DNA of 60,171 nt from Octopus sinensis (taxonomy: Eukaryota), in contig NW_021833940.1 in assembly GCF_006345805.1 (NCBI RefSeq), forward strand, positions 1 through 60,171, in the 5' to 3' direction. The notes beneath the pieces are model-generated. The model had not been told where the DNA came from and made no database searches. It saw only the letters and a program-made list of their open reading frames with translations. Shown one piece after another: positions 5,959-49,679 of the stretch (its first letter is position 1; the number at the start of each line of letters is the position of its first letter). A program made the position numbers and the translations under genes.

Positions 5959-5998
<40 letters not shown>

Positions 5999-6034
5999 GT
6001 CGTCGTCATCATCATCATCATCATCATCATCATC

Positions 6035-6084
<50 letters not shown>

Positions 6085-14319: not shown

Positions 14320-14426
14320 CCACTGCGTGGCACCTTGGGCAAGTGTCTTCTACTATAGTCTCGGGCCGACCAAAGCCTTGTGAATGGATTTGGTAGACGG
14401 AAACTGAAAAAAGCCCGTCGTATATA

Positions 14427-14485
<59 letters not shown>
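14320..14485 (+). mobile_element. Left half of a family A SINE (microsatellite-core type), headless, ending in (TA)n where the array begins
   Basis: CCACTGCGTGGCACCTTGGGCAAGTGTCTTCTACTATAG...GGAAACTGAAAAAAGCCCGTCG(TA)n matches the 5' part of the intact copy at 49042-49456. Confidence 0.85.
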
Positions 14486-14489
<4 letters not shown>

Positions 14490-17400
14490 TATATTGTCAT
14501 CAAAAAAGGGGGTAGAATTAATTAATTGTTAATAAATTCGACCAAGCAGTATTCGGTATGTAAAGACCATTTACGGTGTATTTGAAGTATTAATTTATAA
14601 AATATGGTAAAGTAAAAAAATTCACTTTACCACACACCGAACTTTTCAGAAATAGCAGCCAAAAATATGGCTATTTCTTCAACTGCAAATAAAAGTCTCC
14701 AGACAATGCATACTCAGAAAATAACTCACATAGGTATAAGGGAAAAACAATGAAAGATCACATCCTATACGATACCCGAGGACAGTCTGTTTCTGGATTT
14801 GTGGGTAAAACGCCACTTTTCCTTCATCAGCTCAGAGATTTCTTCTTATTTAGATTTGAAAATACTAAGAATCAAACATACCCGTCCGATATCTGTAACA
14901 TCGGACAAACCATGCCAGACACCCAGTACTAGCGAATCCAAAAATACGAATGAGATCTATTATTCTCCCTGTCCACCCACGTGAGTCATAGAGCATTACA
15001 TTTCTACAGAGGTAAAAACTGTAGTTCAAATTCTTGGAGAGAAAAGTATTATATTGTCATCAAAAAAGGGGGTAGAATTAATTAATTGTTAATAAATTCG
15101 ACCAAGCAGTATTCGGTATGTAAAGACCATTTACGGTGTATTTGAAGTATTATTTATAAAAATATGGTAAAGTAAAAAAATTCACTTTACCACACACCGA
15201 ACTTTTCAGAAATAGCAGCCAAAAATATGGCTATTTCTTCAACTGCAAATAAAAGTCTCCAGACAATGCATACTCAGAAAATAACTCACATAGGTATAAG
15301 GGAAAAACAATGAAAGATCACATCCATATACGATACCCGAGGACAGTCTGTTTCTGGATTTGTGGGTAAAACGCCACTTTTCCTTCATCAGCTCAGAGAT
15401 TTCTTCTTATTTAGATTTGAAAATACTAAGAATCAAACATACCCGTCCGATATCTGTAACATCGGACAAACCATGCCAGACACCCAGTACTAGCGAATCC
15501 AAAAATACGAATGAGATCTATTATTCTCCCTGTCCACCCACGTGAGTCATAGAGCATTACATTTCTACAGAGGTAAAAACTGTAGTTCAAATTCTTGGAG
15601 AGAAAAGTATTATATTGTCATCAAAAAAGGGGGTAGAATTAATTAATTGTTAATAAATTCGACCAAGCAGTATTCGGTATGTAAAGACCATTTACGGTGT
15701 ATTTGAAGTATTAATTTATAAAAATATGGTAAAGTAAAAAATTCACTTTACCACACACCGAACTTTTCAGAAATAGCAGCCAAAAATATGGCTATTTCTT
15801 CAACTGCAAATAAAAGTCTCCAGACAATGCATACTCAGAAAATAACTCACATAGGTATAAGGGAAAAACAATGAAAGATCACATCCATATACGATACCCG
15901 AGGACAGTCTGTTTCTGGATTTGTGGGTAAAACGCCACTTTTCCTTCATCACTCAGAGATTTCTTCTTATTTAGATTTGAAAATACTAAGAATCAAACAT
16001 ACCCGTCCGATATCTGTAACATCGGACAAACCATGCCAGACACCCAGTACTAGCGAATCCAAAAATACGAATGAGATCTATTATTCTCCCTGTCCACCCA
16101 CGTGAGTCATAGAGCATTACATTTCTACAGAGGTAAAAACTGTAGTTCAAATTCTTGGAGAGAAAAGTATTATATTGTCATCAAAAAAGGGGGTAGAATT
16201 AATTAATTGTTAATAAATTCGACCAAGCAGTATTCGGTATGTAAAGACCATTTACGGTGTATTTGAAGTATTAATTTATAAAAATATGGTAAAGTAAAAA
16301 AATTCACTTTACCACACACCGAACTTTTCAGAAATAGCAGCCAAAAATATGGCTATTTCTTCAACTGCAAATAAAAGTCTCCAGACAATGCATACTCAGA
16401 AAATAACTCACATAGGTATAAGGGAAAAACAATGAAAGATCACATCCATATACGATACCCGAGGACAGTCTGTTTCTGGATTTGTGGTAAAACGCCACTT
16501 TTCCTTCATCAGCTCAGAGATTTCTTCTTATTTAGATTTGAAAATACTAAGAATCAAACATACCCGTCCGATATCTGTAACATCGGACAAACCATGCCAG
16601 ACACCCAGTACTAGCGAATCCAAAAACGAATGAGATCTATTATTCTCCCTGTCCACCCACGTGAGTCATAGAGCATTACATTTCTACAGAGGTAAAAACT
16701 GTAGTTCAAATTCTTGGAGAGAAAAGTATTATATTGTCATCAAAAAAGGGGGTAGAATTAATTAATTGTTAATAAATTCGACCAAGCAGTATTCGGTATG
16801 TAAAGACCATTTACGGTGTATTTGAAGTATTATTTATAAAAATATGGTAAAGTAAAAAAATTCACTTTACCACACACCGAACTTTTCAGAAATAGCAGCC
16901 AAAAATATGGCTATTTCTTCAACTGCAAATAAAAGTCTCCAGACAATGCATACTCAGAAAATAACTCACATAGGTATAAGGGAAAAACAATGAAAGATCA
17001 CATCCATATACGATACCCGAGGACAGTCTGTTTCTGGATTTGTGGGTAAAACGCCACTTTTCCTTCATCAGCTCAGAGATTTCTTCTTATTTAGATTTGA
17101 AAATACTAAGAATCAAACATACCCGTCCGATATCTGTAACATCGGACAAACCATGCCAGACACCCAGTACTAGCGAATCCAAAAATACGAATGAGATCTA
17201 TTATTCTCCCTGTCCACCCCCGTGAGTCATAGAGCATTACATTTCTACAGAGGTAAAAACTGTAGTTCAAATCTTGGAGAGAAAAGTATTATATTGTCAT
17301 CAAAAAGGGGGTAGAATTAATTAATTGTTAATAAATTCGACCAAGCAGTATTCGGTATGTAAAGACCATTTACGGTGTATTTGAAGTATTAATTTATAAA

Positions 17401-20400
17401 AATATGGTAAAGTAAAAAATTCACTTTACCACACACCGAACTTTTCAGAATAGCAGCCAAAAATATGGCTATTTCTTCAACTGCAAATAAAAGTCTCCAG
17501 ACAATGCATACTCAGAAAATAACTCACATAGGTATAAGGGAAAAACAATGAAAGATCACATCCATATACGATACCCGAGGACAGTCTGTTCTGGATTTGT
17601 GGGTAAAACGCCACTTTTCCTCATCAGCTCAGAGATTTCTTCTTATTTAGATTTGAAAATACTAAGAATCAAACATACCCGTCCGATATCTGTAACATCG
17701 GACAAACCATGCCAGACACCCAGTACTAGCGAATCCAAAAACGAATGAGATCTATTATTCTCCCTGTCCACCCACGTGAGTCATAGAGCATTACATTTCT
17801 ACAGAGGTAAAAACTGTAGTTCAAATTCTTGGAGAGAAAAGTATTATATTGTCATCAAAAAAGGGGGTAGATTAATTAATTGTTAATAAATTCGACCAAG
17901 CAGTATTCGGTATGTAAAGACCATTTACGGTGTATTTGAAGTATTAATTTATAAAAATATGGTAAAGTAAAAAATTCACTTTACCACACACCGAACTTTT
18001 CAGAAATAGCAGCCAAAAATATGGCTATTTCTTCAACTGCAAATAAAAGTCTCCAGACAATGCATACTCAGAAAATAACTCACATAGGTATAAGGGAAAA
18101 CAATGAAAGATCACATCCATATACGATACCCGAGGACAGTCTGTTTCTGGATTTGTGGTTAAAACGCCACTTTTCCTTCATCAGCTCAGAGATTTCTTCT
18201 TATTTAGATTTGAAAATACTAAGAATCAACATACCCGTCCGATATCTGTAACATCGGACAAACCATGCCAGACACCCAGTACTAGCGAATCCAAAAATAC
18301 GAATGAGATCTATTATTCTCTCCTGTCCACCCACGTGAGTCATAGAGCATTACATTTCTACAGAGGTAAAAACTGTAGTTCAAATTCTTGGAGAGAAAAG
18401 TATTATATTGTCATCAAAAAAGGGGGTAGAATTAATTAATTGTTATAAATTCGACCAAGCAGTATTCGGTATGTAAAGACCATTTACGGTGTATTTGAAG
18501 TATTAATTTATAAAAATATGGTAAATTAAAAAAATTCACTTTACCACACCCGAACTTTTCAGAAATAGCAGCCAAAAATATGGCTATTTCTTCAACTGCA
18601 AATAAAAGTCTCCAGACAATGCATACTCAGAAAATAACTCACATAGGTATAAGGGAAAAACAATGAAAGATCACATCCATATACGATACCCGAGGACAGT
18701 CTGTTTCTGGATTTGTGGGTAAAACGCCTTTTCCTTCATCAGTCATCAGAGATTTCTTCTTATTTAGATTTGAAAATACTAAGAATCAAACATACCCCCG
18801 TCCGATATCTGTAACATCGGACAAACCATGCCAGACACCCAGTACTAGCGAATCCAAAAATACGAATGAGATCTATTATTCTCCCTGTCCACCCACGTGA
18901 GTCATAGAGCATTACATTTCTACAGAGGTAAAAACTGTAGTTCAAATTCTTGGAGAGAAAAGTATTATATTGTCATCAAAAAGGGGGTAGAATTAATTAA
19001 TTGTTAAAATTCGACCAAGCAGTATTCGGTATGTAAAGACCATTTACGGTGTATTTGAAGTATTAATTTATAAAAATATGGTAAAGTAAAAAATTCACTT
19101 TACCACACACCGAACTTTTCAGAAATAGCAGCCAAAAATATGGCTATTTCTTCAACTGCAAATAAAAGTCTCCAGACAATGCATACTCAGAAAATAACTC
19201 ACATAGGTATAAGGGAAAAACAATGAAAGATCACATCCATATACGATACCCGAGGACAGTCTGTTTCTGGATTTGTGGGTAAAACGCCACTTTTCCTTCA
19301 TCAGCTCAGAGATTTCTTCTTATTTAGATTTGAAAATACTAAGAATCAAACATACCCGTCCGATATCTGTAACATCGGACAAACCATGCCAGACACCCAG
19401 TACTAGCGAATCCAAAAATACGAATGAGATCTATTATTCTCCCTGTCCACCCACGTGAGTCATAGAGCATTACATTTCTACAGAGGTAAAAACTGTAGTT
19501 CAAATTCTTGAGAAAAGTATTATATTGTCATCAAAAAAGGGGGTAGAATTAATTAATTGTTAATAAATTCGACCAAGCAGTATTCGGTATGTAAAGACCA
19601 TTTACGGTGTATTTGAAGTATTAATTTATAAAAATATGGTAAAGTAAAAAAATTCACTTTACCACACACCGAACTTTTCAGAAATAGCAGCCAAAAATAT
19701 GGCTATTTCTTCAACTGCAAATAAAAGTCTCCAGACAATGCATACTCAGAAAATAACTCACATAGGTATAAGGGAAAAACAATGAAAGATCACATCCATA
19801 TACGATACCCGAGGACAGTCTGTTTCTGGATTTGTGGGTAAAACGCCACTTTTCCTTCATCAGCTCAGAGATTTCTTCTTATTTAGATTTGAAAATACTA
19901 AGAATCAAACATACCCGTCCGATATCTGTAACATCGGACAAACCATGCCAGACACCCAGTACTAGCGAATCCAAAAATACGAATGAGATCTATTATTCTC
20001 CCTGTCCACCCACGTGAGTCATAGAGCATTACATTTCTACAGAGGTAAAAACTGTAGTTCAAATTCTTGGAGAGAAAAGTATTATATTGTCATCAAAAAA
20101 GGGGGTAGAATTAATTAATTGTTAATATTCGACCAAGCAGTATTCGGTATGTAAAGACCATTTACGGTGTATTTGAAGTATTAATTTATAAAAATATGGT
20201 AAAGTAAAAAAATTCACTTTACCACACACCGAACTTTTCAGAATAGCAGCCAAAAATATGGCTATTTCTTCACTGCAAATAAAAGTCTCCAGACAATGCA
20301 TACTCAGAAAATAACTCACATAGGTATAAGGGAAAAACAATGAAAGATCACATCCATATACGATACCCGAGGACAGTCTGTTTCTGGATTTGTGGGTAAA

Positions 20401-23400
20401 ACGCCACTTTTCCTTCATCAGCTCAGAGATTTCTTCTTATTTAGATTTGAAAATACTAAGAATCAAACATACCCGTCCGATATCTGTAACATCGGACAAA
20501 CCATGCCAGACACCCAGTACTAGCGAATCCAAAAATACGAATGAGATCTATATTCTCCCTGTCCACCCACGTGAGTCATAGAGCATTACATTTCTACAGA
20601 GGTAAAAACTGTAGTTCAAATTCTTGGAGAGAAAAGTATTATATTGTCATCAAAAAAGGGGGTAGAATTAATTAATTGTTAATAAATTCGACCAAGCAGT
20701 ATTCGGTATGTAAAGACCATTTACGGTGTATTTGAAGTATTAATTTATAAAAATGGTAAAGTAAAAAAATTCACTTTACCACACACCGAACTTTTCAGAA
20801 ATAGCAGCCAAAAATATGGCTATTTCTTCAACTGCAAATAAAAGTCTCCAGACAATGCATACTCAGAAAATAACTCACATAGGTATAAGGGAAAAACATG
20901 AAAGATCACATCCATATACGATACCCGAGGACAGTCTGTTTCTGGATTTGTGGGTAAAACGCCACTTTTCCTTCATCAGCTCAGAGATTTCTTCTTATTT
21001 AGATTTGAAAATACTAAGAATCAAACATACCCGTCCGATATCTGTAACATCGGACAAACCATGCCAGACACCCAGTACTAGCGAATCCAAAAATACGAAT
21101 GAGATCTATTATTCTCCCTGTCCACCCACGTGAGTCATAGAGCATTACATTTCTACAGAGGTAAAAACTGTAGTTCAAATTCTTGGAGAGAAAAGTATTA
21201 TATTGTCATCAAAAAAGGGGGTAGAATTAATTAATTGTTAATAAATTCGACCAAGCAGTATTCGGTATGTAAAGACCATTTACGGTGTATTTGAAGTATT
21301 AATTTATAAAAATATGGTAAAGTAAAAAAATTCACTTTACCACACACCGAACTTTTCAGAAATAGCAGCCAAAAATATGGCTATTTCTTCAACTGCAAAT
21401 AAAAGTCTCCAGACAATGCATACTCAGAAAATAACTCACATAGGTATAAGGGAAAAACAATGAAAGATCACATCCATATACGATACCCGAGGACAGTCTG
21501 TTTCTGGATTTGTGGGTAAAACGCCACTTTTCCTTCATCAGCTCAGAGATTTCTTCTTATTTAGATTTGAAAATACTAAGAATCAAACATACCCGTCCGA
21601 TATCTGTAACATCGGACAAACCATGCCAGACACCCAGTACTAGCGAATCCAAAAATACGAATGAGATCTATTATTCTCCCTGTCCACCCACGTGAGTCAT
21701 AGAGCATTACATTTCTACAGAGGTAAAAACTGTAGTTCAAATTCTTGGAGAGAAAAGTATATATTGTCATCAAAAAAGGGGGTAGAATTAATTAATTGTT
21801 AATAAATTCGACCAAGCAGTATTCGGTATGTAAAGACCATTTACGGTGTATTTGAAGTATTAATTATAAAAATATGGTAAAGTAAAAAAATTCACTTTAC
21901 CACACACCGAACTTTTCAGAAATAGCAGCCAAAAATATGGCTATTTCTTCAACTGCAAATAAAAGTCTCCAGACAATGCATACTCAGAAAATAACTCACA
22001 TAGGTATAAGGGAAAAACAATGAAAGATCACATCCATATACGATACCCGAGGACAGTCTGTTTCTGGATTTGTGGGTAAAACGCCACTTTTCCTTCATCA
22101 GCTCAGAGATTTCTCTTATTTAGATTTGAAAATACTAAGAATCAAACATACCCGTCCGATATCTGTAACATCGGACAAACCATGCCAGACACCCAGTACT
22201 AGCGAATCCAAAAATACGAATGAGATCTATTATTCTCCCTGTCCACCCACGTGAGTCATAGAGCATTACATTTCTACAGAGGTAAAAACTGTAGTTCAAA
22301 TTCTTGGAGAGAAAAGTATTATATTGTCATCAAAAAAGGGGGTAGAATTAATTAATTGTTAATAAATTCGACCAAGCAGTATTCGGTATGTAAAGACCAT
22401 TTACGGTGTATTTGAAGTATTAATTTATAAAAATATGGTAAAGTAAAAAAATTCACTTTACCACACACCGAACTTTTCAGAAATAGCAGCCAAAAATATG
22501 GCTATTTCTTCAACTGCAAATAAAAGTCTCCAGACAATGCATACTCAGAAAATAACTCACATAGGTATAAGGGAAAAACAATGAAAGATCACATCCATAT
22601 ACGATACCCGAGGACAGTCTGTTTCTGGATTTGTGGGTAAAACGCCACTTTTCCTTCATCAGCTCAGAGATTTCTTCTTATTTAGATTTGAAAATACTAA
22701 GAATCAAACATACCCGTCCGATATCTGTAACATCGGACAAACCATGCCAGACACCCAGTACTAGCGAATCCAAAAATACGAATGAGATCTATTATTCTCC
22801 CTGTCCACCCACGTGAGTCATAGAGCATTACATTTCTACAGAGAACTAAAAACTGTAGTTCAAATTCTTGGAGAGAAAAGTATTATATTGTCATCAAAAA
22901 AGGGGGTAGAATAATTAATTGTTAAAATTCGACCAAGCAGTATTCGGTATGTAAAGACCATTTACGGTGTATTTGAAGTATTAATTTATAAAATATGGTA
23001 AAGTAAAAAAATTCACTTTACCACACACCGAACTTTTCAGAAATAGCAGCCAAAAATATGGCTATTTCTTCAACTGCAAATAAAAGTCTCCAGACAATGC
23101 ATACTCAGAAAATAACTCACATAGGTATAAGGGAAAAACAATGAAAGATCACATCCATATACGATACCCGAGGACAGTCTGTTTCTGGATTTGTGGGTAA
23201 AACGCCACTTTTCCTTCATCAGCTCAGAGATTTCTTCTTATTTAGATTTGAAAATACTAAGAATCAAACATACCCGTCCGATATCTGTAACATCGGACAA
23301 ACCATGCCAGACACCCAGTACTAGCGAATCCAAAAATACGAATGAGATCTATTATTCTCCCTGTCCACCCACGTGAGTCATAGAGCATTACATTTCTACA

Positions 23401-26400
23401 GAGGTAAAAACTGTAGTTCAAATTCTTGGAGAGAAAAGTATTATATTGTCATCAAAAAAGGGGGTGGGGGTAGAATTAATAATTGTTAATAAATTCGACC
23501 AAGCAGTATTCGGTATGTAAAGACCATTTACGGTGTATTTGAAGTATTAATTTATAAAAATATGGTAAAGTAAAAAAATTCACTTTACCACACCCGAACT
23601 TTTCAGAAATAGCAGCCAAAAATATGGCTATTTCTTCAACTGCAAATAAAAGTCTCCAGACAATGCATACTCAGAAAATAACTCACATAGGTATAAGGGA
23701 AAAACAATGAAAGATCACATCCATATACGATACCCGAGGACAGTCTGTTTCTGGATTTGTGGGTAATAAAACGCCACTTTTCCTTCATCAGCTCAGAGAT
23801 TTCTTCTTATTTAGATTTGAAAATACTAAGAATCAAACATACCCGTCCGATATCTGTAACATCGGACAAACCATGCCAGACACCCAGTACTAGCGAATCC
23901 AAAAATACGAATGAGATCTATTATTCTCCCTGTCCACCCACGTGAGTCATAGAGCATTACATTTCTACAGAGGTAAAAACTGTAGTTCAAATTCTTGGAG
24001 AGAAAAGTATTATATTGTCATCAAAAAAGGGGGTAGAATTAATTAATTGTTAATAAATTCGACCAAGCAGTATTCGGTATGTAAAGACCATTTACGGTGT
24101 ATTTGAAGTATTAATTTATAAAAATATGGTAAAGTAAAAAAATTCACTTTACCACACACCGAACTTTTCAGAAATAGCAGCAAAAATATGGCTATTTCTT
24201 CAACTGCAAATAAAAGTCTCCAGACAATGCATACTCAGAAAATAACTCACATAGGTATAAGGGAAAAACAATGAAAGATCACATCCATATACGATACCCG
24301 AGGACAGTCTGTTCTGGATTTGTGGGTAAAACGCCACTTTTCCTTCATCAGCTCAGAGATTTCTTCTTATTTAGATTTGAAAATACTAAGAATCAAACAT
24401 ACCCGTCCGATATCTGTAACATCGGACAAACCATGCCAGACACCCAGTACTAGCGAATCCAAAAATACGAATGAGATCTATTATTCTCCCTGTCCACCCA
24501 CGTGAGTCATAGAGCATTACATTTCTACAGAGGTAAAAACTGTAGTTCAAATTCTTGGAGAGAAAAGTATTATATTGTCATCAAAAAAGGGGGTAGAATT
24601 AATTAATTGTTAATAAATTCGACCAAGCAGTATTCGGTATGTAAAGACCATTTACGGTGTATTTGAAGTATTAATTTATAAAAATATGGTAAAGTAAAAA
24701 AATTCACTTTACACACACCGAACTTTTCAGAAATAGCAGCCAAAAATATGGCTATTTCTTCAACTGCAAATAAAAGTCTCCAGACAATGCATACTCAGAA
24801 AATAACTCACATAGGTATAAGGGAAAAACAATGAAAGATCACATCCATATACGATACCCGAGGACAGTCTGTTTCTGGATTTGTGGGTAAAACGCCACTT
24901 TTCCTTCATCAGCTCAGAGATTTCTTCTTATTTAGATTTGAAAATACTAAGAATCAAACATACCCGTCCGATATCTGTAACATCGGACAAACCATGCCAG
25001 ACACCCAGTACTAGCGAATCCAAAAATACGAATGAGATCTATTATTCTCCCTGTCCACCCACGTGAGTCATAGAGCATTACATTTCTACAGAGGTAAAAA
25101 CTGTAGTTCAAATTCTTGGAGAGAAAAGTATTATATTGTCATCAAAAAAGGGGGTAGAATTAATTAATTGTTAATAAATTCGACCAAGCAGTATTCGGTA
25201 TGTAAAGACCATTTACGGTGTATTGTATTAAGTATTAATTTATAAAATATGGTAAAGTAAAAAATTCACTTTACCACACACCGAACTTTTCAGAAATAGC
25301 AGCCAAAAATATGGCTATTTCTTCAACTGCAAATAAAAGTCTCCAGACAATGCATACTCAGAAAATAACTCACATAGGTATAAGGGAAAAACAATGAAAG
25401 ATCACATCCATATACGATACCCGAGGACAGTCTGTTTCTGGATTTGTGGGTAAAACGCCACTTTTCCTTCATCAGCTCAGAGATTTCTTCTTATTTAGAT
25501 TTGAAAATACTAAGAATCAAACATACCCGTCCGATATCTGTAACATCGGACAAACCATGCCAGACACCCAGTACTAGCGAATCCAAAAATACGAATGAGA
25601 TCTATTATTCTCCCTGTCCACCCACGTGAGTCATAGAGCATTACATTTCTACAGAGGTAAAAACTGTAGTTCAAATTCTTGGAGAGAAAAGTATTATATT
25701 GTCATCAAAAAAGGGGGTAGAATTAATTAATTGTTAATAAATTCGACCAAGCAGTATTCGGTATGTAAAGACCATTTACGGTGTATTTGAAGTATTAATT
25801 TATAAAAATATGGTAAATTAAAAAAATTCACTTTACCACACACCGAACTTTTCAGAAATAGCAGCCAAAAATATGGCTATTTCTTCAACTGCAATAAAAG
25901 TCTCCAGACAATGCATACTCAGAAAATAACTCACATAGGTATAAGGGAAAAACAATGAAAGATCACATCCCCATATACGATACCCGAGGACAGTCTGTTT
26001 CTGGATTTGTGGGTAAAACGCCACTTTTCCTTCATCAGCTCAGAGATTTCTTCTTATTTAGATTTGAAAATACTAAGAATCAAACATACCCGTCCGATAT
26101 CTGTAACATCGGACAAACCATGCCAGACACCCAGTACTAGCGAATCCAAAAATACGAATGAGATCTATTATTCTCCCTGTCCACCACGTGAGTCATAGAG
26201 CATTACATTTCTACAGAGGTAAAAACTGTAGTTCAAATTCTTGGAGAGAAAAGTATTATATTGTCATCAAAAAGGGGGTAGAATTAATTAATTGTTAATA
26301 AATTCGACCAAGCAGTATTCGGTATGTAAAGACCATTACGGTGTATTTGAAGTATAATTTATAAAAATATGGTAAAGTAAAAAAATTCACTTTACCACAC

Positions 26401-29400
26401 ACCGAACTTTTCAGAAATAGCAGCCAAAAATATGGCTATTTCTTCAACTGCAAATAAAAGTCTCCAGACAATGCATACTCAGAAAATAACTCACATAGGT
26501 ATAAGGGAAAAACAATGAAAGATCACATCCATATACGATACCCGAGGACAGTCTGTTTCTGGATTTGTGGTAGTAAAACGCCACTTTTCCTTCATCAGCT
26601 CAGAGATTTCTTCTTATTTAGATTTGAAAATACTAAGAATCAAACATACCCGTCCGATATCTGTAACATCGGACAAACCATGCCAGACAACCAGTACTAG
26701 CGAATCCAAAAATACGAATGAGATCTATTATTCCCTGTCCACCCACGTGAGTCATAGAGCATTACATTTCTACAGAGGTAAAAACTGTAGTTCAAATTCT
26801 TGGAGAGAAAAGTATTATATTGTCATCAAAAAAGGGGGTAGAATTAATTAATTGTTAATAAATTCGACCAAGCAGTATTCGGTATGTAAAGACCATTTAC
26901 GGTGTATGAAGTATTAATTATAAAAATATGGTAAAGTAAAAAAATTCACTTTACCACACACCGAACTTTTCAGAAATAGCAGCCAAAAATATGGCTATTT
27001 CTTCAACTGCAAATAAAAGTCTCCAGACAATGCATACTCAGAAAATAACTCACATAGGTATAAGGGAAAAACAATGAAAGATCACATCCATATACGATAC
27101 CCGAGGACAGTCTGTTTCTGGATTTGTGGGTAAAACGCCACTTTTCCTTCATCAGCTCAGAGATTTCTTCTTATTTAGATTTGAAAATACTAAGAATCAA
27201 ACATACCCGTCCGATATCTGTAACATCGGACAAACCATGCCAGACACCCAGTACTAGCGAATCCAAAAATACGAATGAGATCTATTATTCTCCCTGTCCA
27301 CCCACGTGAGTCATAGAGCATTACATTTCTACAGAGGTAAAAACTGTAGTTCAAATTCTTGGAGAGAAAAGTATTATATTGTCATCAAAAAAGGGGGTAG
27401 AATTAATTAATTGTTAATAAATTCGACCAAGCAGTATTCGGTATGTAAAGACCATTTACGGTGTATTTGAAGTATTAATTTATAAAAATATGGTAAAGTA
27501 AAAAAATTCACTTTACACACACCGAACTTTTCAGAAATAGCAGCCAAAAATATGGCTATTTCTTCAACTGCAAATAAAAGTCTCCAGACAATGCATACTC
27601 AGAAAATAACTCACATAGGTATAAGGAAAAAACAATGAAAGATCACATCCATATACGATACCCGAGGACAGTCTGTTTCTGGATTTGTGGGTAAAACGCC
27701 ACTTTTCCTTCATCAGCTCAGAGATTTCTTCTTATTTAGATTTGAAAATACTAAGAATCAAACATACCCGTCCGATATCTGTAACATCGGACAAACCATG
27801 CCAGACACCCAGTACTAGCGAATCCAAAAATACGAATGAGATCTATTATTCTCCCTGTCCACCCACGTGAGTCATAGAGCATTACATTTCTACAGAGGTA
27901 AAAACTGTAGTTCAAATTCTTGGAGAGAAAAGTATTATATTGTCATCAAAAAAGGGGGTAGAATTAATTAATTGTTAATAAATTCGACCAAGCAGTATTC
28001 GGTATGTAAAGACCATTTACGGTGTATTTGAAGTATTAATTTATAAAAATATGGTAAAGTAAAAAATTCACTTTACCACACACCGAACTTTTCAGAAATA
28101 GCAGCCAAAAATATGGCTATTTCTTCAACTGCAAATAAAAGTCTCCAGACAATGCATACTCAGAAAATAACTCACATAGGTATAGGGAAAAACAATGAAA
28201 GATCACATCCATATACGATACCCGAGGACAGTCTGTTTCTGGATTTGTGGGGTAAAACGCCACTTTTCCTTCATCAGCTCAGAGATTTCTCTTATTTAGA
28301 TTTGAAAATACTAAGAATCAAACATACCCGTCCGATATCTGTAACATCGGACAAACCATGCCAGACACCCAGTACTAGCGAATCCAAAAATACGAATGAG
28401 ATCTATTATTCTCCCTGTCCACCCACGTGAGTCATAGAGCATTACATTTCTACAGAGGTAAAAACTGTAGTTCAAATTCTTGGAGAGAAAAGTATTATAT
28501 TGTCATCAAAAAAGGGGGTAGAATTAATTAATTGTTAATAAATTCGACCAAGCAGTATTCGGTATGTAAAGACCATTTACGGTGTATTTGAAGTATTAAT
28601 TTATAAAAATATGGTAAAGTAAAAAAATTCACTTTACCACACACCGAACTTTTCAGAAATAGCAGCCAAAAATATGGCTATTTCTTCAACTGCAAATAAA
28701 AGTCTCCAGACAATGCATACTCAGAAAATAACTCACATAGGTATAAGGGAAAAACAATGAAAGATCACATCCATATACGATACCCGAGGACAGTCTGTTT
28801 CTGGATTTGTGGGTAAAACGCCACTTTTCTTCATCAGCTCAGAGATTTCTTCTTATTTAGATTTGAAAATACTAAGAATCAAACATACCCGTCCGATATC
28901 TGTAACATCGGACAAACCATGCCAGACACCCAGTACTAGCGAATCCAAAAATACGAATGAGATCTATTATTCTCCCTGTCCACCCACGTGAGTCATAGAG
29001 CATTACATTTCTACAGAGGTAAAAACTGTAGTTCAAATTCTTGGAGAGAAAAGTATTATATTGTCATCAAAAAAGGGGGTAGAATTAATTAATTGTTAAT
29101 AAATTCGACCAAGCAGTATTCGGTATGTAAAGACCATTTACGGTGTATTTGAAGTATTAATTTATAAAAATATGGTAAAGTAAAAAAATTCACTTTACCA
29201 CACACCGAACTTTTCAGAAATAGCAGCCAAAAATATGGCTATTTCTTCAACTGCAAATAAAAGTCTCCAGACAATGCATACTCAGAAAATAACTCACATA
29301 GGTATAAGGGAAAAACAATGAAAGATCACATCCATATACGATACCCGAGGACAGTCTGTTTCTGGATTTGTGGTAAAAGTTAAAACGCCACTTTTCTTCA

Positions 29401-31971
29401 TCAGCTCAGAGATTTCTTCTATTTAGATTTGAAAATACTAAGAATCAAACATACCCGTCCGATATCTGTAACATCGGACAAACCATGCCAGACACCCAGT
29501 ACTAGCGAATCCAAAAATACGAATGAGATCTATTATTCTCCCTGTCCACCACGTGAGTCATAGAGCATTACATTTCTACAGAGGAAAAACAAGTTGTAGT
29601 TCAAATTCTGGAGAGAAAAGTATTATATTGTCATCAAAAAGGGGGTAGAATTAATTAATTGTTAATAAATTCGACCAAGCAGTATTCGGTATGTAAAGAC
29701 CATTTACGGTGTATTTGAAGTATTAATTTATAAAAATATGGTAAAGTAAAAAAATTCACTTTACCACACACCGAACTTTTCAGAAATAGCAGCCAAAAAT
29801 ATGGCTATTTCTTCAACTGCAAATAAAAGTCTCCAGACAATGCATACTCAGAAAATAACTCACATAGGTATAAGGGAAAAACAATGAAAGATCACATCCA
29901 TATACGATACCCGAGGACAGTCTGTTTCTGGATTTGTGGGTAAAACGCCACTTTTCCTTCATCAGCTCAGAGATTTCTTCTTATTTAGATTTGAAAATAC
30001 TAAGAATCAAACATACCCGTCCGATATCTGTAACATCGGACAAACCATGCCAGACACCCAGTACTAGCGAATCCAAAAATACGAATGAGATCTATTATTC
30101 TCCCTGTCCACCCACGTGAGTCATAGAGCATTACATTTCTACAGAGGTAAAAACTGTAGTTCAAATTCTTGGAGAGAAAAGTATTATATTGTCATCAAAA
30201 AAGGGGGTAGAATTAATTAATTGTTAATAAATTCGACCAAGCAGTATTCGGTATGTAAAGACCATTTACGGTGTATTTGAAGTATTAATTTATAAAAATA
30301 TGGTAAAGTAAAAAAATTCACTTTACCACACACCGAACTTTTCAGAAATAGCAGCCAAAAATATGGCTATTTCTTCAACTGCAAATAAAAGTCTCCAGAC
30401 AATGCATACTCAGAAAATAACTCACATAGGTATAAGGAAAAACAATGAAAGATCACATCCATATACGATACCCGAGGACAGTCTGTTTCTGGATTTGTGG
30501 TGTAAAACGCCACTTTTCCTCATCAGCTCAGAGATTTCTTCTTATTTAGATTTGAAAATACTAAGAATCAAACATACCCGTCCGATATCTGTAACATCGG
30601 ACAAACCATGCCAGACACCCAGTACTAGCGAATCCAAAAATACGAATGAGATCTATTATTCTCCCTGTCCACCCACGTGAGTCATAGAGCATTACATTTC
30701 TACAGAGGTAAAAACTGTAGTTCAAATTCTTGGAGAGAAAAGTATTATATTGTCATCAAAAAAGGGGGTAGAATTAATTAATTGTTAATAAATTCGACCA
30801 AGCAGTATTCGTAGTATGTAAAGACCATTTACGGTGTATTTGAAGTATTAATTTATAAAAATATGGTAAAGTAAAAAAATTCACTTTACCACACACCGAA
30901 CTTTTCAGAAATAGCAGCCAAAAATATGGCTATTTCTTCAACTGCAAATAAAAGTCTCCAGACAATGCATACTCAGAAAATAACTCACATAGGTATAAGG
31001 GAAAAACAATGAAAGATCACATCCATATACGATACCCGAGGACAGTCTGTTTCTGGATTTGTGGGTAAAACGCCACTTTTCCTTCATCAGCTCAGAGATT
31101 TCTTCTTATTTAGATTTGAAAATACTAAGAATCAAACATACCCGTCCGATATCTGTAACATCGGACAAACCATGCCACACCACCCAGTACTAGCGAATCC
31201 AAAAATACGAATGAGATCTTATTATTCCTGTCCACCCACGTGAGTCATAGAGCATTACATTTCTACAGAGGTAAAAACTGTAGTTCAAATTCTTGGAGAG
31301 AAAAGTATTATATTGTCATCAAAAAAGGGGGTAGAATTAATTAATTGTTAATAAATTCGACCAAGCAGTATTCGGTATGTAAAGACCATTTACGGTGTAT
31401 TTGAAGTATTAATTTATAAAAATATGGTAAAGTAAAAAAATTCACTTTACCACACACCGAACTTTTCAGAAATAGCAGCCAAAAATATGGCTATTTCTTC
31501 AATGCAAATAAGTCTCCAGACAATGCATACTCAGAAAATAACTCACATAGGTATAAGGGAAAAACAATGAAAGATCACATCCATATACGATACCCGAGGA
31601 CAGTCTGTTTCTGGATTTGTGGGTAAAACGCCACTTTTCCTTCATCAGCTCAGAGATTTCTTCTTATTTAGATTTGAAAATACTAAGAATCAAACATACC
31701 CGTCCGATATCTGTAACATCGGACAAACCATGCCAGACCCAGTACTAGCGAATCCAAAAATACGAATGAGATCTATTATTCTCCTGTCCACCCACGTGAG
31801 TCATAGAGCATTACATTTCTACAGAGGTAAAAACTGTAGTTCAAATTCTTGGAGAGAAAAGTATTATATTGTCATCAAAAAAGGGGGTAGAATTAATTAA
31901 TTGTTAATAAATTCGACCAAGCAGTATTCGGTATGTAAAGACCATTTACGGTGTATTTGAAGTATTAATTT
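14486..31971 (-). repeat. Tandem array of 31 full plus one partial (~110 bp) ~560-bp hammerhead-bearing units (retrozyme-like satellite)
   Basis: The unit start GTATTATATTGTCATC recurs at 14486, 15046, 15607, 16167 ... 31305, 31861, a mean period of about 560.5 bp. Units differ almost only by small indels. Confidence 0.97.
14775..14836 (-). ncRNA. Type I hammerhead ribozyme, first copy (repeats every ~560 bp; last full copy 31593-31654; a few copies carry indels)
   Basis: Minus strand: UCUGAG CUGAUGA A-GGA-AAA-GUGG-CGUUUUAC-CCAC-AAA-UCC-A GAA ACAG-A-CUGU C / CUCGGG. The CUGAUGA and GAAA core, stems I, II and III and the GUC triplet are all present. The predicted cut lies between window positions 14781 and 14780. 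An extra A on each side at the base of stem II is non-canonical. Confidence 0.82.
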
Positions 31972-32088
31972 CTGTCGGTTTCTTTTTGCTGAACCGCTAA
32001 ATTACGTGGTCGTAAACACACAAGCATCGGTTGTCAAGCGATGTTAGGGGACAGACACACAAACATACACACACACACACACACACCA

Positions 32089-32123
<35 letters not shown>

Positions 32124-32559
32124 TAAATACATACATACATACATATATAAAAATGCCACTTTTCCTTCATCAGCTCAGAGATTTCTTCTTATTTAGATTT
32201 GAAAATACTAAGAATCAAACATACCCGTCCGATATCTGTAACATCGGACAAACCATGCCAGACACCCAGTACTAGCGAATCCAAAAATACGAATGAGATC
32301 TATTATTCTCCCTGTCCACCCCGTGAGTCATAGAGCATTAGTAATGCTCTATGACTCACGTGGGTGGACAGGGAGAATAATAGATCTCATTCGTATTTTT
32401 GGATTCGCTAGTACTGGGTGTCTGGCATGGTTTGTCCGATGTTACAGATATCGGACGGGTATGTTTGATTCTTAGTATTTTCAAATCTAAATAAGAAGAA
32501 ATCTCTGAGCTGATGAAGGAAAAGTGGCATTTTTATATATGTATGTATGTATGTATTTA

Positions 32560-32630
<71 letters not shown>

Positions 32631-32723
32631 TTGTGTGTCTGTCCCCTAACATCGCTTGACAACCGATGCTTGTGTGTTTACGACCACGTAATTTAGCGGT
32701 TCAGCAAAAAGAAACCGACAGAA
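31970..32723. repeat. Long palindrome (arms about 371 and 382 bp, 1-nt spacer at 32341) made of SINE 3' sequence plus about 190 bp of array unit
   Basis: ...TAGAGCATTA-G-TAATGCTCTA... at the centre. The arms match out to TTCTGTCGG / CCGACAGAA and differ mainly in microsatellite length. Confidence 0.93.
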
Positions 32724-32840
32724 TAAGTACCAGGCTTACAAAGAATAAGTTGCTCGACTAAAGGCGGTGTTCCAGCATGGCCGCAGTCAAATGACTGAAA
32801 CAAGCAAAAGAGTAAAAGAGAGAGAGAGAGAGAGAGAGAG
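32529..32840 (+). mobile_element. Right half of the family A SINE split by the array
   Basis: (TATG/TG)n then CATCGCTTGACAACCGATG...GGCCGCAGTCAAATGACTGAAACAAG-(AG)n, matching the 3' part of 49042-49456. Confidence 0.85.
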
Positions 32841-35017: not shown

Positions 35018-36210
35018 TAACCTATAAATAGATTCGATTTTTAACATCATATGCGTCAGAGTGTTATCAAAAATTTTGACTTTTCGATGGGGTCTCTATC
35101 TTCTGCATTTCCACCCTTTCTCTGTACTGTAAGTAGCAGTTCTCTGTTCAAAACTGAATGTATAATTCTGATTGACTACTGATCTACCTGGAATTTAAAA
35201 CACTCTCGGTGTCGAATGTTTGATTATTGTGCCCAAGTTCCTGTGTTTGAAGAGACGAGAAAATCGCAACTTTTCTATTTATTAATGTTTTAGAAAACCA
35301 TATCTTTAACCACAAATACATATAGTGTGAGTATATTCTTTGGTAGTTCTACTTCTAGTTCTAATGATCTTGTGCCTTTTTTATGGAGGGAGCTTGTTAG
35401 AATGACATACTTGACCCCACTGACAGTCACAGCTATTACAAGGAGATAATCATTTCGTCCTAATATGAACCATGATTATAGATTTGAAATTGAAAAATTA
35501 AGGAGTCATTAGGAACAATATGCATTGAATACGCATATTAATTTTTTTTTATTTACTCAATACGAAGTTCTTAAAATTTCTAGTCTTTAGAAATAATATA
35601 TTGACTATTTCATTCCTTTTAGAAATCATCTGCATGATGCAACCTGTGACTTATAAAGAAATATATGTGGTAGATGATAGTTTTGTGAGATGTTAGTTAA
35701 TTTGGGACTGTGAAGCAACGTGTGTTGGTAATGTTTGATGAAGTTGTCTAGAGATCTTTTATGATTTTAGGGACTAGTATCACATTCTCAACAGCAGAAA
35801 GGTTGGAACGACATATTTGGTTTTATTTTTAAACGAATGAGAATAGACATTTGCACATCAAATTATGGAAGTTTTATAAACCACGATATTGCATACTTCA
35901 GGGAAATTTATTTGAGATATTTCAAGTTGCAAATACGAATACTTGAATATAAATTAAAATTAAATTTCGGTTCCTTCTCATGCTGGTTCTGCAGGGTCAG
36001 AGAAAACACACCTGCCTCCATGCAGTTGATGTGTATACCATTGTAATTAATAGAGGTGAATGATATTAATATGCTCCGTTTCTTTTGCTTTATCGTGTAG
36101 AATTTTGTGTTATTGTTTCTGATGTTCTTGTGTATATATGTATATATGTATGTGTAAGTGAATGTATTATATATGTAGGTACACGCACGCGCGAACATAC
36201 ACACATATAT

Positions 36211-36616
36211 ACTCTTTTACTTGTTTCAGTCATTTGACTGCGGCCATGCTGGAGCACCACCTTTTAGTCGAGCAAATCGACCCCGGGACTTATTCTTTGT
36301 AAGCCCAGTACTTATTCTATCGGTCTCTTTTGCCGAACCGCTAAGTGACGGGGATGTAAACACACCAGCATCGGTTGTCAAGCAATGCTAGAGGGACAAA
36401 CACAGACACACAAACACACACATACATATATACATATATATACATATATACGACGGGCTTCTTTTCAGTTTCCGTCTACCAAATCCACTCACAAGGCATT
36501 GGTCGGCCCGGGGCTATAGCAGAAGACACTTGCCCAAGATGCCACGCAGTGGGACTGAACCCGGAACCATGTGGTTGGTTAGCAAGCTACTTACCACACA
36601 GACACTCTTGCGCCTA
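36211..36616 (-). mobile_element. Full-length family A SINE
   Basis: Collinear with 49042-49456 in reverse orientation. Confidence 0.9.
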
Positions 36617-49041: not shown

Positions 49042-49456
49042 GGCATAGGAGTGGCTGTGTGGTAAGTAGCTTGCTTACGAACCACATGGTTCCGGGTTCA
49101 GTCCCACTGTGTGGCACTTTGGGCAAGTGTCTTCTACTATAGCCTTGGGCCGACCAAAGCCTTGTGAGTGGATTTGGTAGACGGAAACTGAAAGAAACCC
49201 GTCGTATATATGTATATATATGTATATATGTATGTGTGTATATGTTTGTGTGTCTGTGTTTGTCCCCACAACATCGCTTGACAACCGATACTGGTGTGTT
49301 TACGACCCGTAACCGAGCGGTTCGGCAAAAGAGACCGATAGAATAAGTACTGGGCTTACAAAGAATAAGTCCTAGGGTCGATTTGCTCGACTAAAGGCGG
49401 TGCTGCAGCATGGCCGCAGTCAAATGACTGAAACAAGTAAAAGAGTAAAAGAGAGT
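49042..49456 (+). mobile_element. Full-length family A tRNA-derived SINE with a central microsatellite
   Basis: A-box-like GTGGCTGTGTGG, B-box-like GGGTTCAGTCCC, a central (TA/TG)n and an AAGAGT tail. Confidence 0.9.
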
Positions 49457-49679
49457 AATAGACATAGACAATCCTCTTAAATATGAGATAGCACGGTGAT
49501 GGAAAATGAAGAAGGTGAAGATAATGCAAGTTACTTTTGGGTCGTTGGGGGAGAATATCAGAAGGAATCAAGAGGAACACAAAGGAAATCGGAACAGAGT
49601 GCCTAGTAGAGCTGTTACAAAAGTTTTGCCTCCTTCGCACTATCAGAATAGTGAGGAAAATATTAAAAAATAAATAAAT

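What the first reader, a model, noticed from the sequence alone, without database searches (positions are those of the whole stretch)
14486..31971. 17.5-kb array of 31 hammerhead-ribozyme units: a candidate cephalopod retrozyme / self-cleaving satellite
Seen: each ~560-bp unit reads on the minus strand UCUGAG-CUGAUGA-A[GGA AAA GUGG loop CCAC AAA UCC]A-GAA-ACAG A CUGU-C-CUCGGG. This gives a 6-bp stem I, both conserved core segments, a bipartite stem II, a near-palindromic stem III and a GUC cleavage triplet. Established: tandem type I hammerheads define newt, cricket and schistosome satellites and metazoan non-LTR retrozymes. Their multimeric transcripts self-cleave to monomers and circles, and short palindromic stem IIIs work as dimers. 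Inference: a read-through transcript would be cut into ~560-nt monomers that circularise, and the array is a rolling-circle cDNA of such a circle. The unit appears longer than the metazoan retrozyme monomers I know of (a few hundred nt), and I know of no such family described in octopus, though I cannot search.
Basis: partly seen in the sequence, partly recalled or inferred. Interest (0 to 1): 0.93.

Follow-up and report, generated by a model that had tools for sequence, protein, structure and literature searches.

The report
Tandem hammerhead-ribozyme retrozyme array
A 17.5-kb run of 31 almost identical 562-bp repeats, each carrying a self-cutting "hammerhead" RNA motif, is most likely a retrozyme, a parasitic element that spreads through small circular RNAs; this kind is already known in corals, mussels, insects and amphibians but I found no report of it in cephalopods.

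Summary
Window 14486-31971 is a head-to-tail array of 31 units of about 562 bp. On the minus strand each unit carries a type I hammerhead-like motif: 6-bp helix I, CUGAUGA, a bipartite helix II, GAAA, a palindromic ACAGACUGU helix III, and GUC|C. About 5 in 10,000 random units pass my descriptor, and nothing else in the window does.

The unit RNA is strongly structured only in the hammerhead polarity (z -6.7 versus -2.4; 15% G.U pairs). The unit is non-coding and 35% GC. The array sits inside the microsatellite of a SINE-like repeat whose intact copies give two "empty sites". This fits a non-LTR retrozyme with a Penelope-like-element (PLE) type hammerhead that acts as a dimer.

Caveats:
- Rfam's hammerhead models do not score the motif.
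- Positions 10.1/11.1 are A.A, not the conserved G-C.
- The copies are about 99.9% identical and I could get no outside copies, so covariation, expression and cleavage are untested.

Verdict: a probable new member of a known kind, of moderate interest.

The parts
14486..31971 (-). Head-to-tail array of 31.1 units of about 562 bp (30 full units from cleavage site to cleavage site, plus two truncated end units)
   Evidence: 31 cleavage motifs, spacing 555-566; 0-17 differences from the consensus; edges read
20930..21491 (-). Reference monomer, identical to the 562-nt consensus. The RNA would run from C1.1 (21491) to C17 (20930)
   Evidence: unit u21491_20930, 0 differences. Circular MFE -164.1 kcal/mol, z = -6.7; 178 pairs, 27 of them G.U
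15336..15397 (-). Representative hammerhead motif: UCUGAG-CUGAUGA-A-GGA-AAA-GUGG-CGUUUUAC-CCAC-AAA-UCC-A-GAA-ACAGACUGU-C|CUCGGG. The predicted cut is between 15342 (C17) and 15341 (C1.1)
   Evidence: Pair probabilities in the circular monomer: helix II 0.93-1.0, helix I about 0.65
15897..15958 (-). Naturally defective copy (C3 of the core missing, GAG-UGAUGA). One of 7 copies that fail the descriptor; the others have motif starts at 17574, 18689, 24297, 28783, 29344 and 30471
14421..14485 (.). (TA)n microsatellite abutting the 3' end of the array; part of the target site
14320..14425 (-). Downstream half of the SINE-like host repeat (CGACGGGCTT...CCACGCAGTGG)
   Evidence: 93% identity to 49209-49104 and 36446-36552
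32640..32835 (-). Upstream half of the same SINE-like host repeat, ending in GGGGACAGACACACA-(AC)n
   Evidence: 83% identity to 49468-49261 and 36210-36398
32341..32533 (+). Inverted partial unit (consensus 344-536). It starts at the upstream flank inside hammerhead loop 2 and forms the left arm of the palindrome core
   Evidence: 99.5% identity
32150..32340 (-). Direct partial unit (consensus 345-536), the right arm of the palindrome core
   Evidence: 99.0% identity
31970..32149 (+). Mirror-image copy of the upstream flank: an 84-nt SINE fragment (31970-32053, 100% identical to the reverse complement of 32640-32723) plus microsatellite. It lies between the palindrome core and the array
36210..36552 (+). 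Uninterrupted paralogue of the host repeat ('empty site' 1): the two halves are separated only by a microsatellite of about 50 nt
49104..49468 (-). Uninterrupted paralogue of the host repeat ('empty site' 2)
60092..60171 (-). Diverged (about 75% identity), truncated relative of unit positions 117-202, followed by (TA)n and cut by the end of the window
   Evidence: score 51; 0 of 2000 shuffles reach it, maximum 34; best of 1474 other window tiles 31

Best explanation
This is a non-autonomous, non-LTR retrozyme, equivalently a hammerhead-bearing satellite, of an octopod-like genome. Proposed cycle:
1. The array is transcribed on the minus strand into multimeric RNA. The promoter is unknown (inferred).
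2. Each unit carries a type I hammerhead whose helix III (ACAG-A-CUGU) cannot close on itself. Two motifs pair their palindromic helix III strands into a double hammerhead of 8 bp plus a central A.A. Each then cuts after GUC (anatomy shown; catalysis inferred).
3. The 562-nt monomers, with 5'-OH and 2',3'-cyclic phosphate ends held together by helix I at a multi-way junction, are circularised by a host RtcB-type tRNA ligase (inferred from the coral, mussel and axolotl systems).
4. The circle is stable, because a lone motif lacks helix III, and folds into a highly paired branched rod (predicted here).
5. A reverse transcriptase supplied in trans, most plausibly from a Penelope-like element, copies the circle round and round. 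The multimeric cDNA is inserted at a microsatellite (inferred). What is shown: the array interrupts the microsatellite of a SINE-like repeat, and its ends fall at arbitrary positions of the unit rather than at the cleavage site.
The hammerhead is of the PLE-like flavour: a long helix II, an extra nucleotide after A9, and a palindromic helix III.
For: Motif: every invariant core position is present in the right order, with a 6-bp helix I and a GUC triplet. The chance of such a motif in a random unit is about 5e-4 under a descriptor that does not even require the full helix III palindrome or the second helix II stem. There are no hits elsewhere in the window. Dimer logic: helix III has an intramolecular MFE of 0 and an intermolecular MFE of -8.3 kcal/mol, as in the amphibian and PLE hammerheads that work as dimers. 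PLE-type traits are described: larger helix II, an unpaired nucleotide between A9 and 10.1, and palindromic 15.2-16.2. A non-Watson-Crick pair at the base of helix II has an active precedent in axolotl HHR_Amex2, which has U.U. RNA-level constraint: circular MFE -164.1 versus -117.2 +/- 7.0 for shuffles (z -6.7) on the hammerhead strand, but z -2.4 on the complement; 27 of 178 pairs are G.U. Class traits: tandem, 34.7% GC, longest stop-free frame 81 aa with no homologues. Unit size and copy number are within published ranges. The motif MFE of -13.5 passes the <-5 kcal/mol working criterion. Mobility: two empty-site paralogues and a diverged dispersed fragment next to (TA)n. Microsatellite targeting and an inverted 5'-truncated copy upstream are both described for PLE-type insertions.
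Against: Rfam hammerhead covariance models give no hit at gathering score, nor at E<=10 even on the 86-nt motif alone. Positions 10.1/11.1 are A.A, whereas G10.1-C11.1 is highly conserved even in PLE mini-hammerheads, and there is an extra A on the 3' side as well as the 5' side, so activity could be low or absent. There is no covariation evidence: only 20 substitutions in about 16,800 aligned bases, and 85% of the differences are 1-nt indels that look like long-read noise. Differences are not depleted in the hammerhead region (30 observed versus 17.9 expected). No transcript data are available. No PLE reverse transcriptase or GIY-YIG endonuclease lies in the window. No second full locus was seen. 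PLE hammerheads cleave poorly in vitro, and cleavage was dispensable for PLE insertion in vitro.
Confidence: 0.72

Rival explanations
1. It is an ordinary satellite or tandem duplication that expanded in place by unequal crossing-over or replication slippage. Its hammerhead-like motif is a dead relic or a coincidence: no self-cleavage, no circular RNA, no retrotransposition today.
For: No Rfam hammerhead hit. A.A at 10.1/11.1, where G-C is conserved. No depletion of differences in the motif, and 7 of 31 copies are broken. Near-identity of the units is equally expected from recent in-place expansion. Given how many windows a genome scan inspects, a 5e-4 coincidence is not impossible.
Against: The descriptor probability ignores several further matching features: the full 4+4 palindrome of helix III, the second helix II stem, 6 of 6 helix I pairs, and the PLE-type extra nucleotide. 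Strong, strand-specific RNA structure on the same strand as the motif (z -6.7 versus -2.4; 15% G.U) is not expected of an inert satellite. The array is an insertion into a SINE-like repeat, and a diverged copy lies 28 kb away, so the sequence arrived rather than arising in place.
Confidence: 0.15
2. It is not an independent retrozyme but an over-replicated terminal repeat (pLTR) of an autonomous Penelope-like element. It would have been produced as a by-product of PLE insertion, and the hammerhead would serve the PLE.
For: The hammerhead has PLE-type traits. The insertion is in a microsatellite and an inverted truncated copy lies upstream, both described for PLEs. The 2026 preprint finds that retrozymes group with PLE pLTRs.
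Against: No ORF longer than 81 aa exists in any frame of the unit. There is no RT or GIY-YIG domain anywhere in the 60-kb window; Pfam finds only a LINE zf-RVT tail. Thirty-one consecutive units without an intervening ORF match the definition of a non-autonomous retrozyme. This rival differs from the best explanation mainly in ancestry, not mechanism.
Confidence: 0.08
3. Part of what is seen is an assembly artefact. The copy number of the array, and especially the perfect spacer-less palindrome at 31970-32723, could come from mis-assembled or chimeric long reads rather than from the real chromosome.
For: 85% of the differences between units are 1-nt indels, mostly deletions in homopolymer runs, which is typical of unpolished long-read consensus. 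The palindrome arms are 98-100% identical and meet without a spacer, the geometry produced by read-through of a missed hairpin adapter.
Against: The unit, its motif and its tandem phase are consistent over 31 copies. The palindrome is joined to a real target flank on one side, and head-to-head inverted copies are a known product of PLE-type integration. An artefact would change the count and the edge structure, not the nature of the element.
Confidence: 0.2

Closest known systems
Metazoan non-LTR retrozymes (coral Acropora, mussel Mytilus, axolotl; Cervera & de la Pena 2020, PMC7229834; Li et al. 2026 preprint, 10.64898/2026.07.22.740005)
   Same: Tandem head-to-tail units, each with one type I hammerhead; low GC; no LTR, PBS, PPT or ORF; a predicted highly self-paired monomer RNA; arrays from dimers up to hundreds of units; dimer-dependent motifs in some families; a non-Watson-Crick pair at the base of helix II in axolotl HHR_Amex2.
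   Different: Host lineage: I found no cephalopod example in the literature. The monomer is 562 nt, above the 170-400 nt of the 2020 paper though inside the 51-972 bp range of the 2026 preprint. Helix II is bipartite, with a symmetric A-rich 3x3 internal loop and A.A at 10.1/11.1. No loop 1, so no obvious canonical loop1-loop2 contact. No expression data.
Minimal or atypical hammerheads of Penelope-like elements (Cervera & de la Pena 2014, PMC4209133)
   Same: A larger than usual helix II; an extra unpaired nucleotide right after A9; a very short palindromic helix III that needs a second copy; a poorly defined loop 1. Insertions favour microsatellites and often carry an inverted truncated copy upstream (PMC8557442).
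   Different: Those motifs sit in the pLTRs flanking an RT-endonuclease ORF, and here there is no ORF. They keep G10.1-C11.1, whereas here an extra A on both sides gives A.A. Helix I here is a full 6 bp rather than 4-5.
Classical hammerhead satellites: newt satellite 2, Schistosoma Sm-alpha, Dolichopoda pDo500 (PMC2837043)
   Same: Tandem satellite-like repeats whose multimeric transcripts are cut into monomers by a type I hammerhead; double-hammerhead models for weak helices. The pDo500 monomer is roughly 500 bp, from its name and my own knowledge, so it is close in size.
   Different: No sequence similarity could be tested. Those motifs are recognised by the standard models and have G10.1-C11.1, with compensatory changes documented across species; this one has neither.
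Plant LTR retrozymes (Cervera et al. 2016, PMC4918200)
   Same: Non-autonomous, a circular-RNA intermediate of comparable size (600-1000 nt), cleavage by hammerheads, mobilisation in trans.
   Different: The plant elements have type III hammerheads inside LTRs, PBS and PPT, 4-bp target-site duplications, GC above 55%, and usually two motifs per element rather than long arrays.

Membership tests
Hammerhead ribozyme (type I) | Invariant core in order: C3 U4 G5 A6 N7 G8 A9 ... G12 A13 A14 ... A15.1-U16.1, H17 (not G), with helix I open | tested here: met
   CUGAUGA ... GAA-A...U-C| read directly. The descriptor accepts 24 of 31 copies.
Hammerhead ribozyme (type I) | Three helices around the core, including the conserved G10.1-C11.1 pair closing helix II | tested here: inconclusive
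   Helix I has 6 bp (2 G.U). Helix II is 3 bp + a 3x3 loop + 4 bp with pair probability 0.93-1.0, but 10.1/11.1 is A.A. Helix III forms only between two copies. The precedent of U.U in an active axolotl motif keeps this open.
Hammerhead ribozyme (type I) | Recognition by curated covariance models (Rfam Hammerhead_1 and relatives) | tested here: not met
   No hit at gathering score or at E<=10 on 2.3 kb or on 86 nt. Published retrozyme and PLE surveys use RNAmotif/rnabob descriptors instead.
Hammerhead ribozyme (type I) | Compensatory changes in the helices among homologues | tested here: inconclusive
   The copies differ by only 20 substitutions in total. No outside copies were retrievable. 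The one diverged fragment does not include the motif.
Hammerhead ribozyme (type I) | Site-specific Mg2+-dependent self-cleavage giving 5'-OH and 2',3'-cyclic phosphate ends | not testable with these tools
   Needs in vitro transcription of monomer and dimer constructs.
Metazoan non-LTR retrozyme | Tandem repeat with at least two consecutive units, each carrying a complete type I hammerhead (motif MFE < -5 kcal/mol in the 2026 pipeline) | tested here: met
   31 units, with runs of consecutive intact motifs; motif MFE -13.5 kcal/mol; criteria. Whether their rnabob models accept A.A at 10.1/11.1 is unknown.
Metazoan non-LTR retrozyme | Non-coding, low GC (<45-50%), no LTR/PBS/PPT | tested here: met
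   GC 34.7%. Longest stop-free frame 81 aa, and no protein homologue for any frame. The unit is a plain tandem repeat without terminal repeats.
Metazoan non-LTR retrozyme | Monomer RNA predicted to be highly self-paired | tested here: met
   63% of bases paired; z = -6.7 on the hammerhead strand versus -2.4 on the complement.
Metazoan non-LTR retrozyme | Evidence of mobility: insertions at new loci, dispersed copies | tested here: met
   The array interrupts a SINE-like repeat, with two empty-site paralogues. A diverged fragment lies 28 kb away. A target-site duplication cannot be read, because the target is a microsatellite.
Metazoan non-LTR retrozyme | Expression as linear and circular monomer RNA | not testable with these tools
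   No transcriptome of the source organism is reachable. Protein-based look-ups of the unit's ORFs found nothing.
Metazoan non-LTR retrozyme | Co-occurrence with autonomous PLEs in the same genome | not testable with these tools
   None in this 60-kb window. The literature reports PLE lineages in cephalopods, with the Naiad clade described there as remnants.
Autonomous Penelope-like element | An RT plus GIY-YIG endonuclease ORF between the hammerhead-bearing repeats | tested here: not met
   No ORF longer than 81 aa in the unit. Pfam finds no RT or GIY-YIG domain in the window's ORFs.

The most novel reading that the evidence does not exclude
The motif is an active, previously unrecognised structural variant of the type I hammerhead. 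It has a purine-purine A.A 'pair' at 10.1/11.1 and a symmetric A-rich internal loop in a long helix II, which may replace the missing loop 1-loop 2 contact by docking onto helix I. It works only as a double hammerhead, and it defines the first cephalopod retrozyme family, one that standard covariance-model annotation misses.
Probability: 0.35. Interest if true: 0.6.

Novelty: new member of a known kind. Interest (0 to 1): 0.42.

Why it matters
If active, this would extend hammerhead-bearing circular-RNA retroelements to cephalopods. Their genomes are dominated by SINEs and other retroelements, and their RNA biology draws wide interest. It would also give a clean natural test of how much deviation the base of helix II tolerates, since A.A replaces the near-invariant G10.1-C11.1. 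The locus is informative in several ways: a young, nearly error-free 31-mer, defined empty sites, microsatellite targeting, and a head-to-head partial copy at the upstream edge. All of these bear on the open question of whether Penelope-like machinery mobilises animal retrozymes. There is also a practical lesson: Rfam-based annotation misses this class entirely. It would not change the general picture, because retrozymes are already known from cnidarians to amphibians, including molluscs.

Tried and rejected
1. TRF cannot see the array, because its longest period is 500. I used motif spacing instead.
2. Rfam at gathering score and at E<=10, including on the 86-nt motif alone, gave only spurious microsatellite 'miRNA' and snoRNA matches.
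3. I tried to reach copies in other assemblies through accidental ORFs of the unit. Exact look-ups of the 49-aa and 65-aa ORFs found nothing. Homology searches with the 81-aa antisense frame and with all other stop-free frames joined together also found nothing.
4. Exact-pattern scans of the JGI metagenome contigs and of the viral contigs gave 0 hits. These collections hold essentially no animal genomes, so this says nothing about copy number in the host.
5. Covariation within the array is impossible, with only 20 substitutions.
6. The energy of the 'mirror' structure on the complementary strand exceeded that strand's own MFE in stability. That is an artefact of how non-canonical pairs are scored, so I discarded it.
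7. RNAcofold of two isolated motifs returned a fully swapped dimer rather than the double hammerhead. That topology is not nested, so I evaluated only the helix III duplex.
8. The second hairpin of the unit (GGUAAAGU/ACUUUACC) is not kept in the diverged fragment at 60092-60171. That copy is probably decayed, so it is no evidence either way.
9. Organism: exact look-ups of two retroelement ORFs failed. The homology search gave one named hit, Octopus sinensis at 72% identity, and closer unnamed hits in ENA metagenome assemblies.
10. I rejected a protein-coding reading, a tRNA-related reading and a compositional-island reading.

Full report
OBSERVATION. The finding is accurate to the base.

Reading the minus strand, a repeat of about 562 bp starts at 31971/31970, entering the unit at AATTAATAC. 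It ends at 14486, where the unit is cut after CAATATAATAC beside a (TA)n tract. TRF did not list the array only because its longest period is 500.

The predicted cleavage context GAAACAGACTGTC|CTCGGG occurs 31 times on the minus strand, spaced 555-566 bp apart. The 5' core string CTGATGAAGGAAAAGTGG gives 29 matches at up to 3 mismatches, against 0.05 expected by chance. Cut at the predicted sites, the 30 complete units differ from a 562-nt consensus at 0-17 positions.

Of the 134 differences, 78 are 1-nt deletions, 36 are insertions and only 20 are substitutions. The deletions fall mostly in homopolymer runs. Most of the 'variation' is therefore probably long-read consensus noise, and true divergence is about 0.1%. 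It follows that the array cannot supply covariation evidence, and that the count of 31 rests on the assembly.

THE MOTIF. Each unit reads 5'-UCUGAG | CUGAUGA | A GGA AAA GUGG (CGUUUUAC) CCAC AAA UCC A | GAA | ACAG A CUGU | C^CUCGGG-3'. In standard numbering:
- Helix I is 6 bp (C-G, U-A, C-G, G.U, G-C, G.U) and is the open helix, so the motif is type I.
- C3-A9 and G12-A14 are canonical.
- A15.1-U16.1 and C17 give a GUC triplet.
- Helix II is bipartite: 3 bp, a symmetric AAA/AAA internal loop, 4 bp, and an 8-nt loop.
- Helix III is ACAG-A-CUGU.

Two deviations matter. First, positions 10.1/11.1 are A.A. Put another way, there is an extra A on each side of a G-C-closed helix II. Second, helix III cannot close on itself. 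Its intramolecular MFE is 0, whereas two copies form an 8-bp duplex with a central A.A at -8.3 kcal/mol.

I wrote an explicit type I descriptor. It requires CUGANGA and GAAA; a helix II whose first pair may be mismatched if the next three pair; A15.1...U16.1 with 15.2/16.2 paired; H17; and at least 5 of 6 helix I pairs including 1.1/2.1. It accepts 24 of the 31 copies and nothing else on either strand of the remaining 42 kb or so. It accepts 9 of 20,000 random units of the same first-order composition. The real motif also has features the descriptor does not ask for: the full palindrome, a second helix II stem, and 6 of 6 helix I pairs. The seven failing copies have lost C3, or an A of GAAA, or part of helix II.

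THE RFAM NEGATIVE. No hammerhead family is reported at gathering score, at E<=10 over four units, or at E<=10 on the 86-nt motif alone.

I treat this as a weak negative. The groups that defined animal retrozymes and PLE hammerheads find them with RNAmotif or rnabob descriptors ('canonical' and 'minimal' type I), not with covariance models. A 31-nt helix II, an A.A at its base and a 1-nt 'loop 3' are all heavily penalised by a model trained on compact motifs. Even so, it is a defining-feature test that was not met, and I record it as such.

WHAT KIND OF HAMMERHEAD. [quoted passage not shown] The D. virilis variant even has a bulge in the middle of helix II. The present motif fits that description closely. 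The exception is that those motifs retain G10.1-C11.1, while here an A is also present on the 3' side.

A non-Watson-Crick pair at the base of helix II is not disqualifying. Axolotl HHR_Amex2 has U.U there, and it cleaves weakly as a monomer and much better as a dimer.

THE REST OF THE UNIT. The unit is 34.7% GC, like its surroundings. The longest stop-free frame in any phase is 81 aa. No frame has any relative among 5.8 billion predicted proteins.

As a circle, the minus-strand RNA folds to -164.1 kcal/mol, against -117.2 +/- 7.0 for dinucleotide shuffles (z = -6.7), with 63% of bases paired. The complementary RNA reaches only -108.7 (z = -2.4). The difference is explained by 27 G.U pairs among the 178, which become A.C mismatches on the other strand. 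That is the signature of a constraint acting on the RNA of hammerhead polarity, not of DNA-level inverted repeats.

In the full-length fold, positions 13-77 pair with 341-399 in a long interrupted rod, and positions 401-494 form a second long hairpin. Helices I and II of the hammerhead appear natively, with pair probabilities of about 0.65 and 0.93-1.0. Helix I would hold the two ends of a cleaved monomer side by side, a suitable substrate for a ligase.

THE LOCUS IS AN INSERTION. The sequence just below the array is (TA)n-CGACGGGCTT...CCACGCAGTGG (14425-14320). The sequence above the palindrome is ...GGGGACAGACACACA-(AC)n (32835-32640). These are the two halves of one SINE-like dispersed repeat. 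In two other copies in the window (49468-49104 on the minus strand, 36210-36552 on the plus strand), the halves are separated only by a microsatellite of about 50 nt.

So about 18 kb was inserted into the internal microsatellite of that repeat. For the same reason, no target-site duplication can be read. The junctions fall at consensus positions of about 187, 296 and 536-540, never at the cleavage site. That is what copying from a circular template predicts, or internal initiation as shown for a PLE in vitro. It is not what a linear self-cleaved monomer predicts.

Short AT-rich microhomologies exist at the junctions: AAUAUAAUAC next to (TA)n, and GCGUUUUAC next to CATTTTTATAT. I offer these as an observation, not a test.

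THE UPSTREAM EDGE. Between the upstream flank and the array lies a spacer-less palindrome (31970-32723, centre 32340/32341). It consists of the flank, then an inverted partial unit (consensus 536 back to 344), then a direct partial unit (345 to 536), then a mirror copy of the microsatellite and 84 nt of flank. Identity is 98-100%.

An inverted 5'-truncated copy next to the upstream repeat is a described feature of PLE insertions. The mirrored flank is not part of that description, and an unresolved long-read artefact would have the same geometry. I leave this unexplained.

OTHER COPIES. The last 80 bases of the window (60092-60171, minus strand) align to consensus 117-202 at about 75% identity and then run into (TA)n. 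The score is 51, against a maximum of 34 in 2,000 shuffles and 31 in 1,474 other window tiles. The family therefore has older, dispersed, decayed members, again beside a TA microsatellite. The part that would carry the hammerhead lies outside the window.

I could reach no copies elsewhere. Exact ORF look-ups, two homology searches covering all six frames, and three pattern scans of metagenome and viral contigs were all empty. These resources contain almost no animal DNA, so this says nothing about abundance in the host.

HOST AND CONTEXT. The window is rich in microsatellites and SINE-like repeats. It has no tRNA genes, and its only Pfam signal is a LINE zf-RVT tail. A retroelement-derived ORF (48155-48577) has as its only named relative an Octopus sinensis protein at 72% identity. 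Closer matches (82-95%) are in unnamed ENA metagenome assemblies. An octopod origin is plausible but not proven. No PLE reverse transcriptase or endonuclease is present in the window.

MECHANISM (shown versus inferred). Shown from sequence and computation:
- the motif anatomy;
- the obligate need for a second copy to form helix III;
- strand-specific RNA structure;
- non-coding, AT-rich tandem units;
- insertion into a microsatellite, with ends away from the cleavage site.

Inferred by analogy with the coral, mussel and axolotl systems:
- transcription into multimers;
- double-hammerhead cleavage after GUC;
- ligation by an RtcB-type tRNA ligase into a 562-nt circle, which is stable because a lone motif is inactive;
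- rolling-circle reverse transcription by a trans-acting enzyme, most plausibly from a PLE;
- integration at a microsatellite.

Post-insertion expansion by unequal exchange would give the same near-identical units and cannot be excluded.

COMPARISON AND NOVELTY. Functionally and structurally this matches the metazoan non-LTR retrozymes and the classical hammerhead satellites. The motif itself is closest to the PLE-type variants.

The 2020 paper gives 150-450 bp, but the 2026 preprint reports consensus lengths of 51-972 bp (mean 650 bp in ray-finned fishes) and up to 300 units per array. The cricket satellite pDo500 is also of similar size (plus my own knowledge for the length).

What appears new is the host lineage and the helix II architecture. 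Searches for hammerhead or retrozyme together with octopus or cephalopod returned only a PLE paper and a twister survey, neither of which describes such an element. I therefore rate it a new member of a known kind. There is a real but unproven chance that the motif is a new active variant.

VERDICT. The best explanation is a retrozyme with a dimer-acting, PLE-like hammerhead (confidence about 0.72). Interest is moderate (0.42). A specialist would find it welcome but not surprising, and its main value is as a clean locus for testing PLE-mediated mobilisation and the tolerance of the 10.1/11.1 pair.

Noticed in passing
window 31970-32723 (centre 32340/32341): A spacer-less palindrome of about 750 bp at the upstream edge of the array. 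Each arm holds 84 nt of the SINE-like flank, a microsatellite, and a partial unit (consensus 344-536) that ends inside hammerhead loop 2. The arms are 98-100% identical. It may be a head-to-head product of PLE-type integration, a fold-back repair, or a long-read assembly artefact.
   Followed up: partly
window 60092-60171 (-): A diverged (about 75% identity), truncated relative of unit positions 117-202, next to (TA)n and cut by the window end. It shows that the family has older dispersed copies. Its hammerhead end would lie beyond the window.
   Followed up: partly
window 14320-14425 + 32640-32835; paralogues at 36210-36552 (+), 49104-49468 (-), 44244-44439: A dispersed SINE-like repeat of about 350 bp with an internal (AC/AT)n microsatellite. 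That microsatellite is the insertion target of the array. ARAGORN finds no tRNA-like gene in it.
   Followed up: partly
window 10176-10593, 43207-43557, 45924-46634 (also 42480-42867): A second repeat family (...GTCGACCTCGGC...GAATTTGAACTCAGAAC...) occurs as short tandem arrays of 1.9-3.9 units with periods of 182-218 bp at 91-98% identity. SINE-like units arranged in tandem are unusual and were not examined.
   Followed up: no
array 14486-31971, especially consensus 531-538 (hammerhead loop 2): 85% of the differences between units are 1-nt indels, mostly in homopolymer runs, which suggests unpolished long-read consensus. The few multi-base changes (TTA, TA and AACTTTT insertions) cluster in loop 2 of helix II, where a hammerhead tolerates change.
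   Followed up: partly
window 3811-4167 (+) and 48155-48577 (+): Retroelement debris. The first is a LINE-type zf-RVT tail (Pfam E = 7.6e-06, just under the curated cut-off). The second is a conserved 98-aa retroelement C-terminal module with more than 200 relatives; its only named relative is from Octopus sinensis, and its closest relatives are in ENA metagenome assemblies ERZ22665968 and ERZ4235382, presumably as host DNA.
   Followed up: partly
window 5756-6084 and 50574-51130: Long (GAT/ATC)n-type trinucleotide tracts create spurious 100-245-aa Asp/His/Met-rich ORFs on both strands. They are not genes.
   Followed up: no
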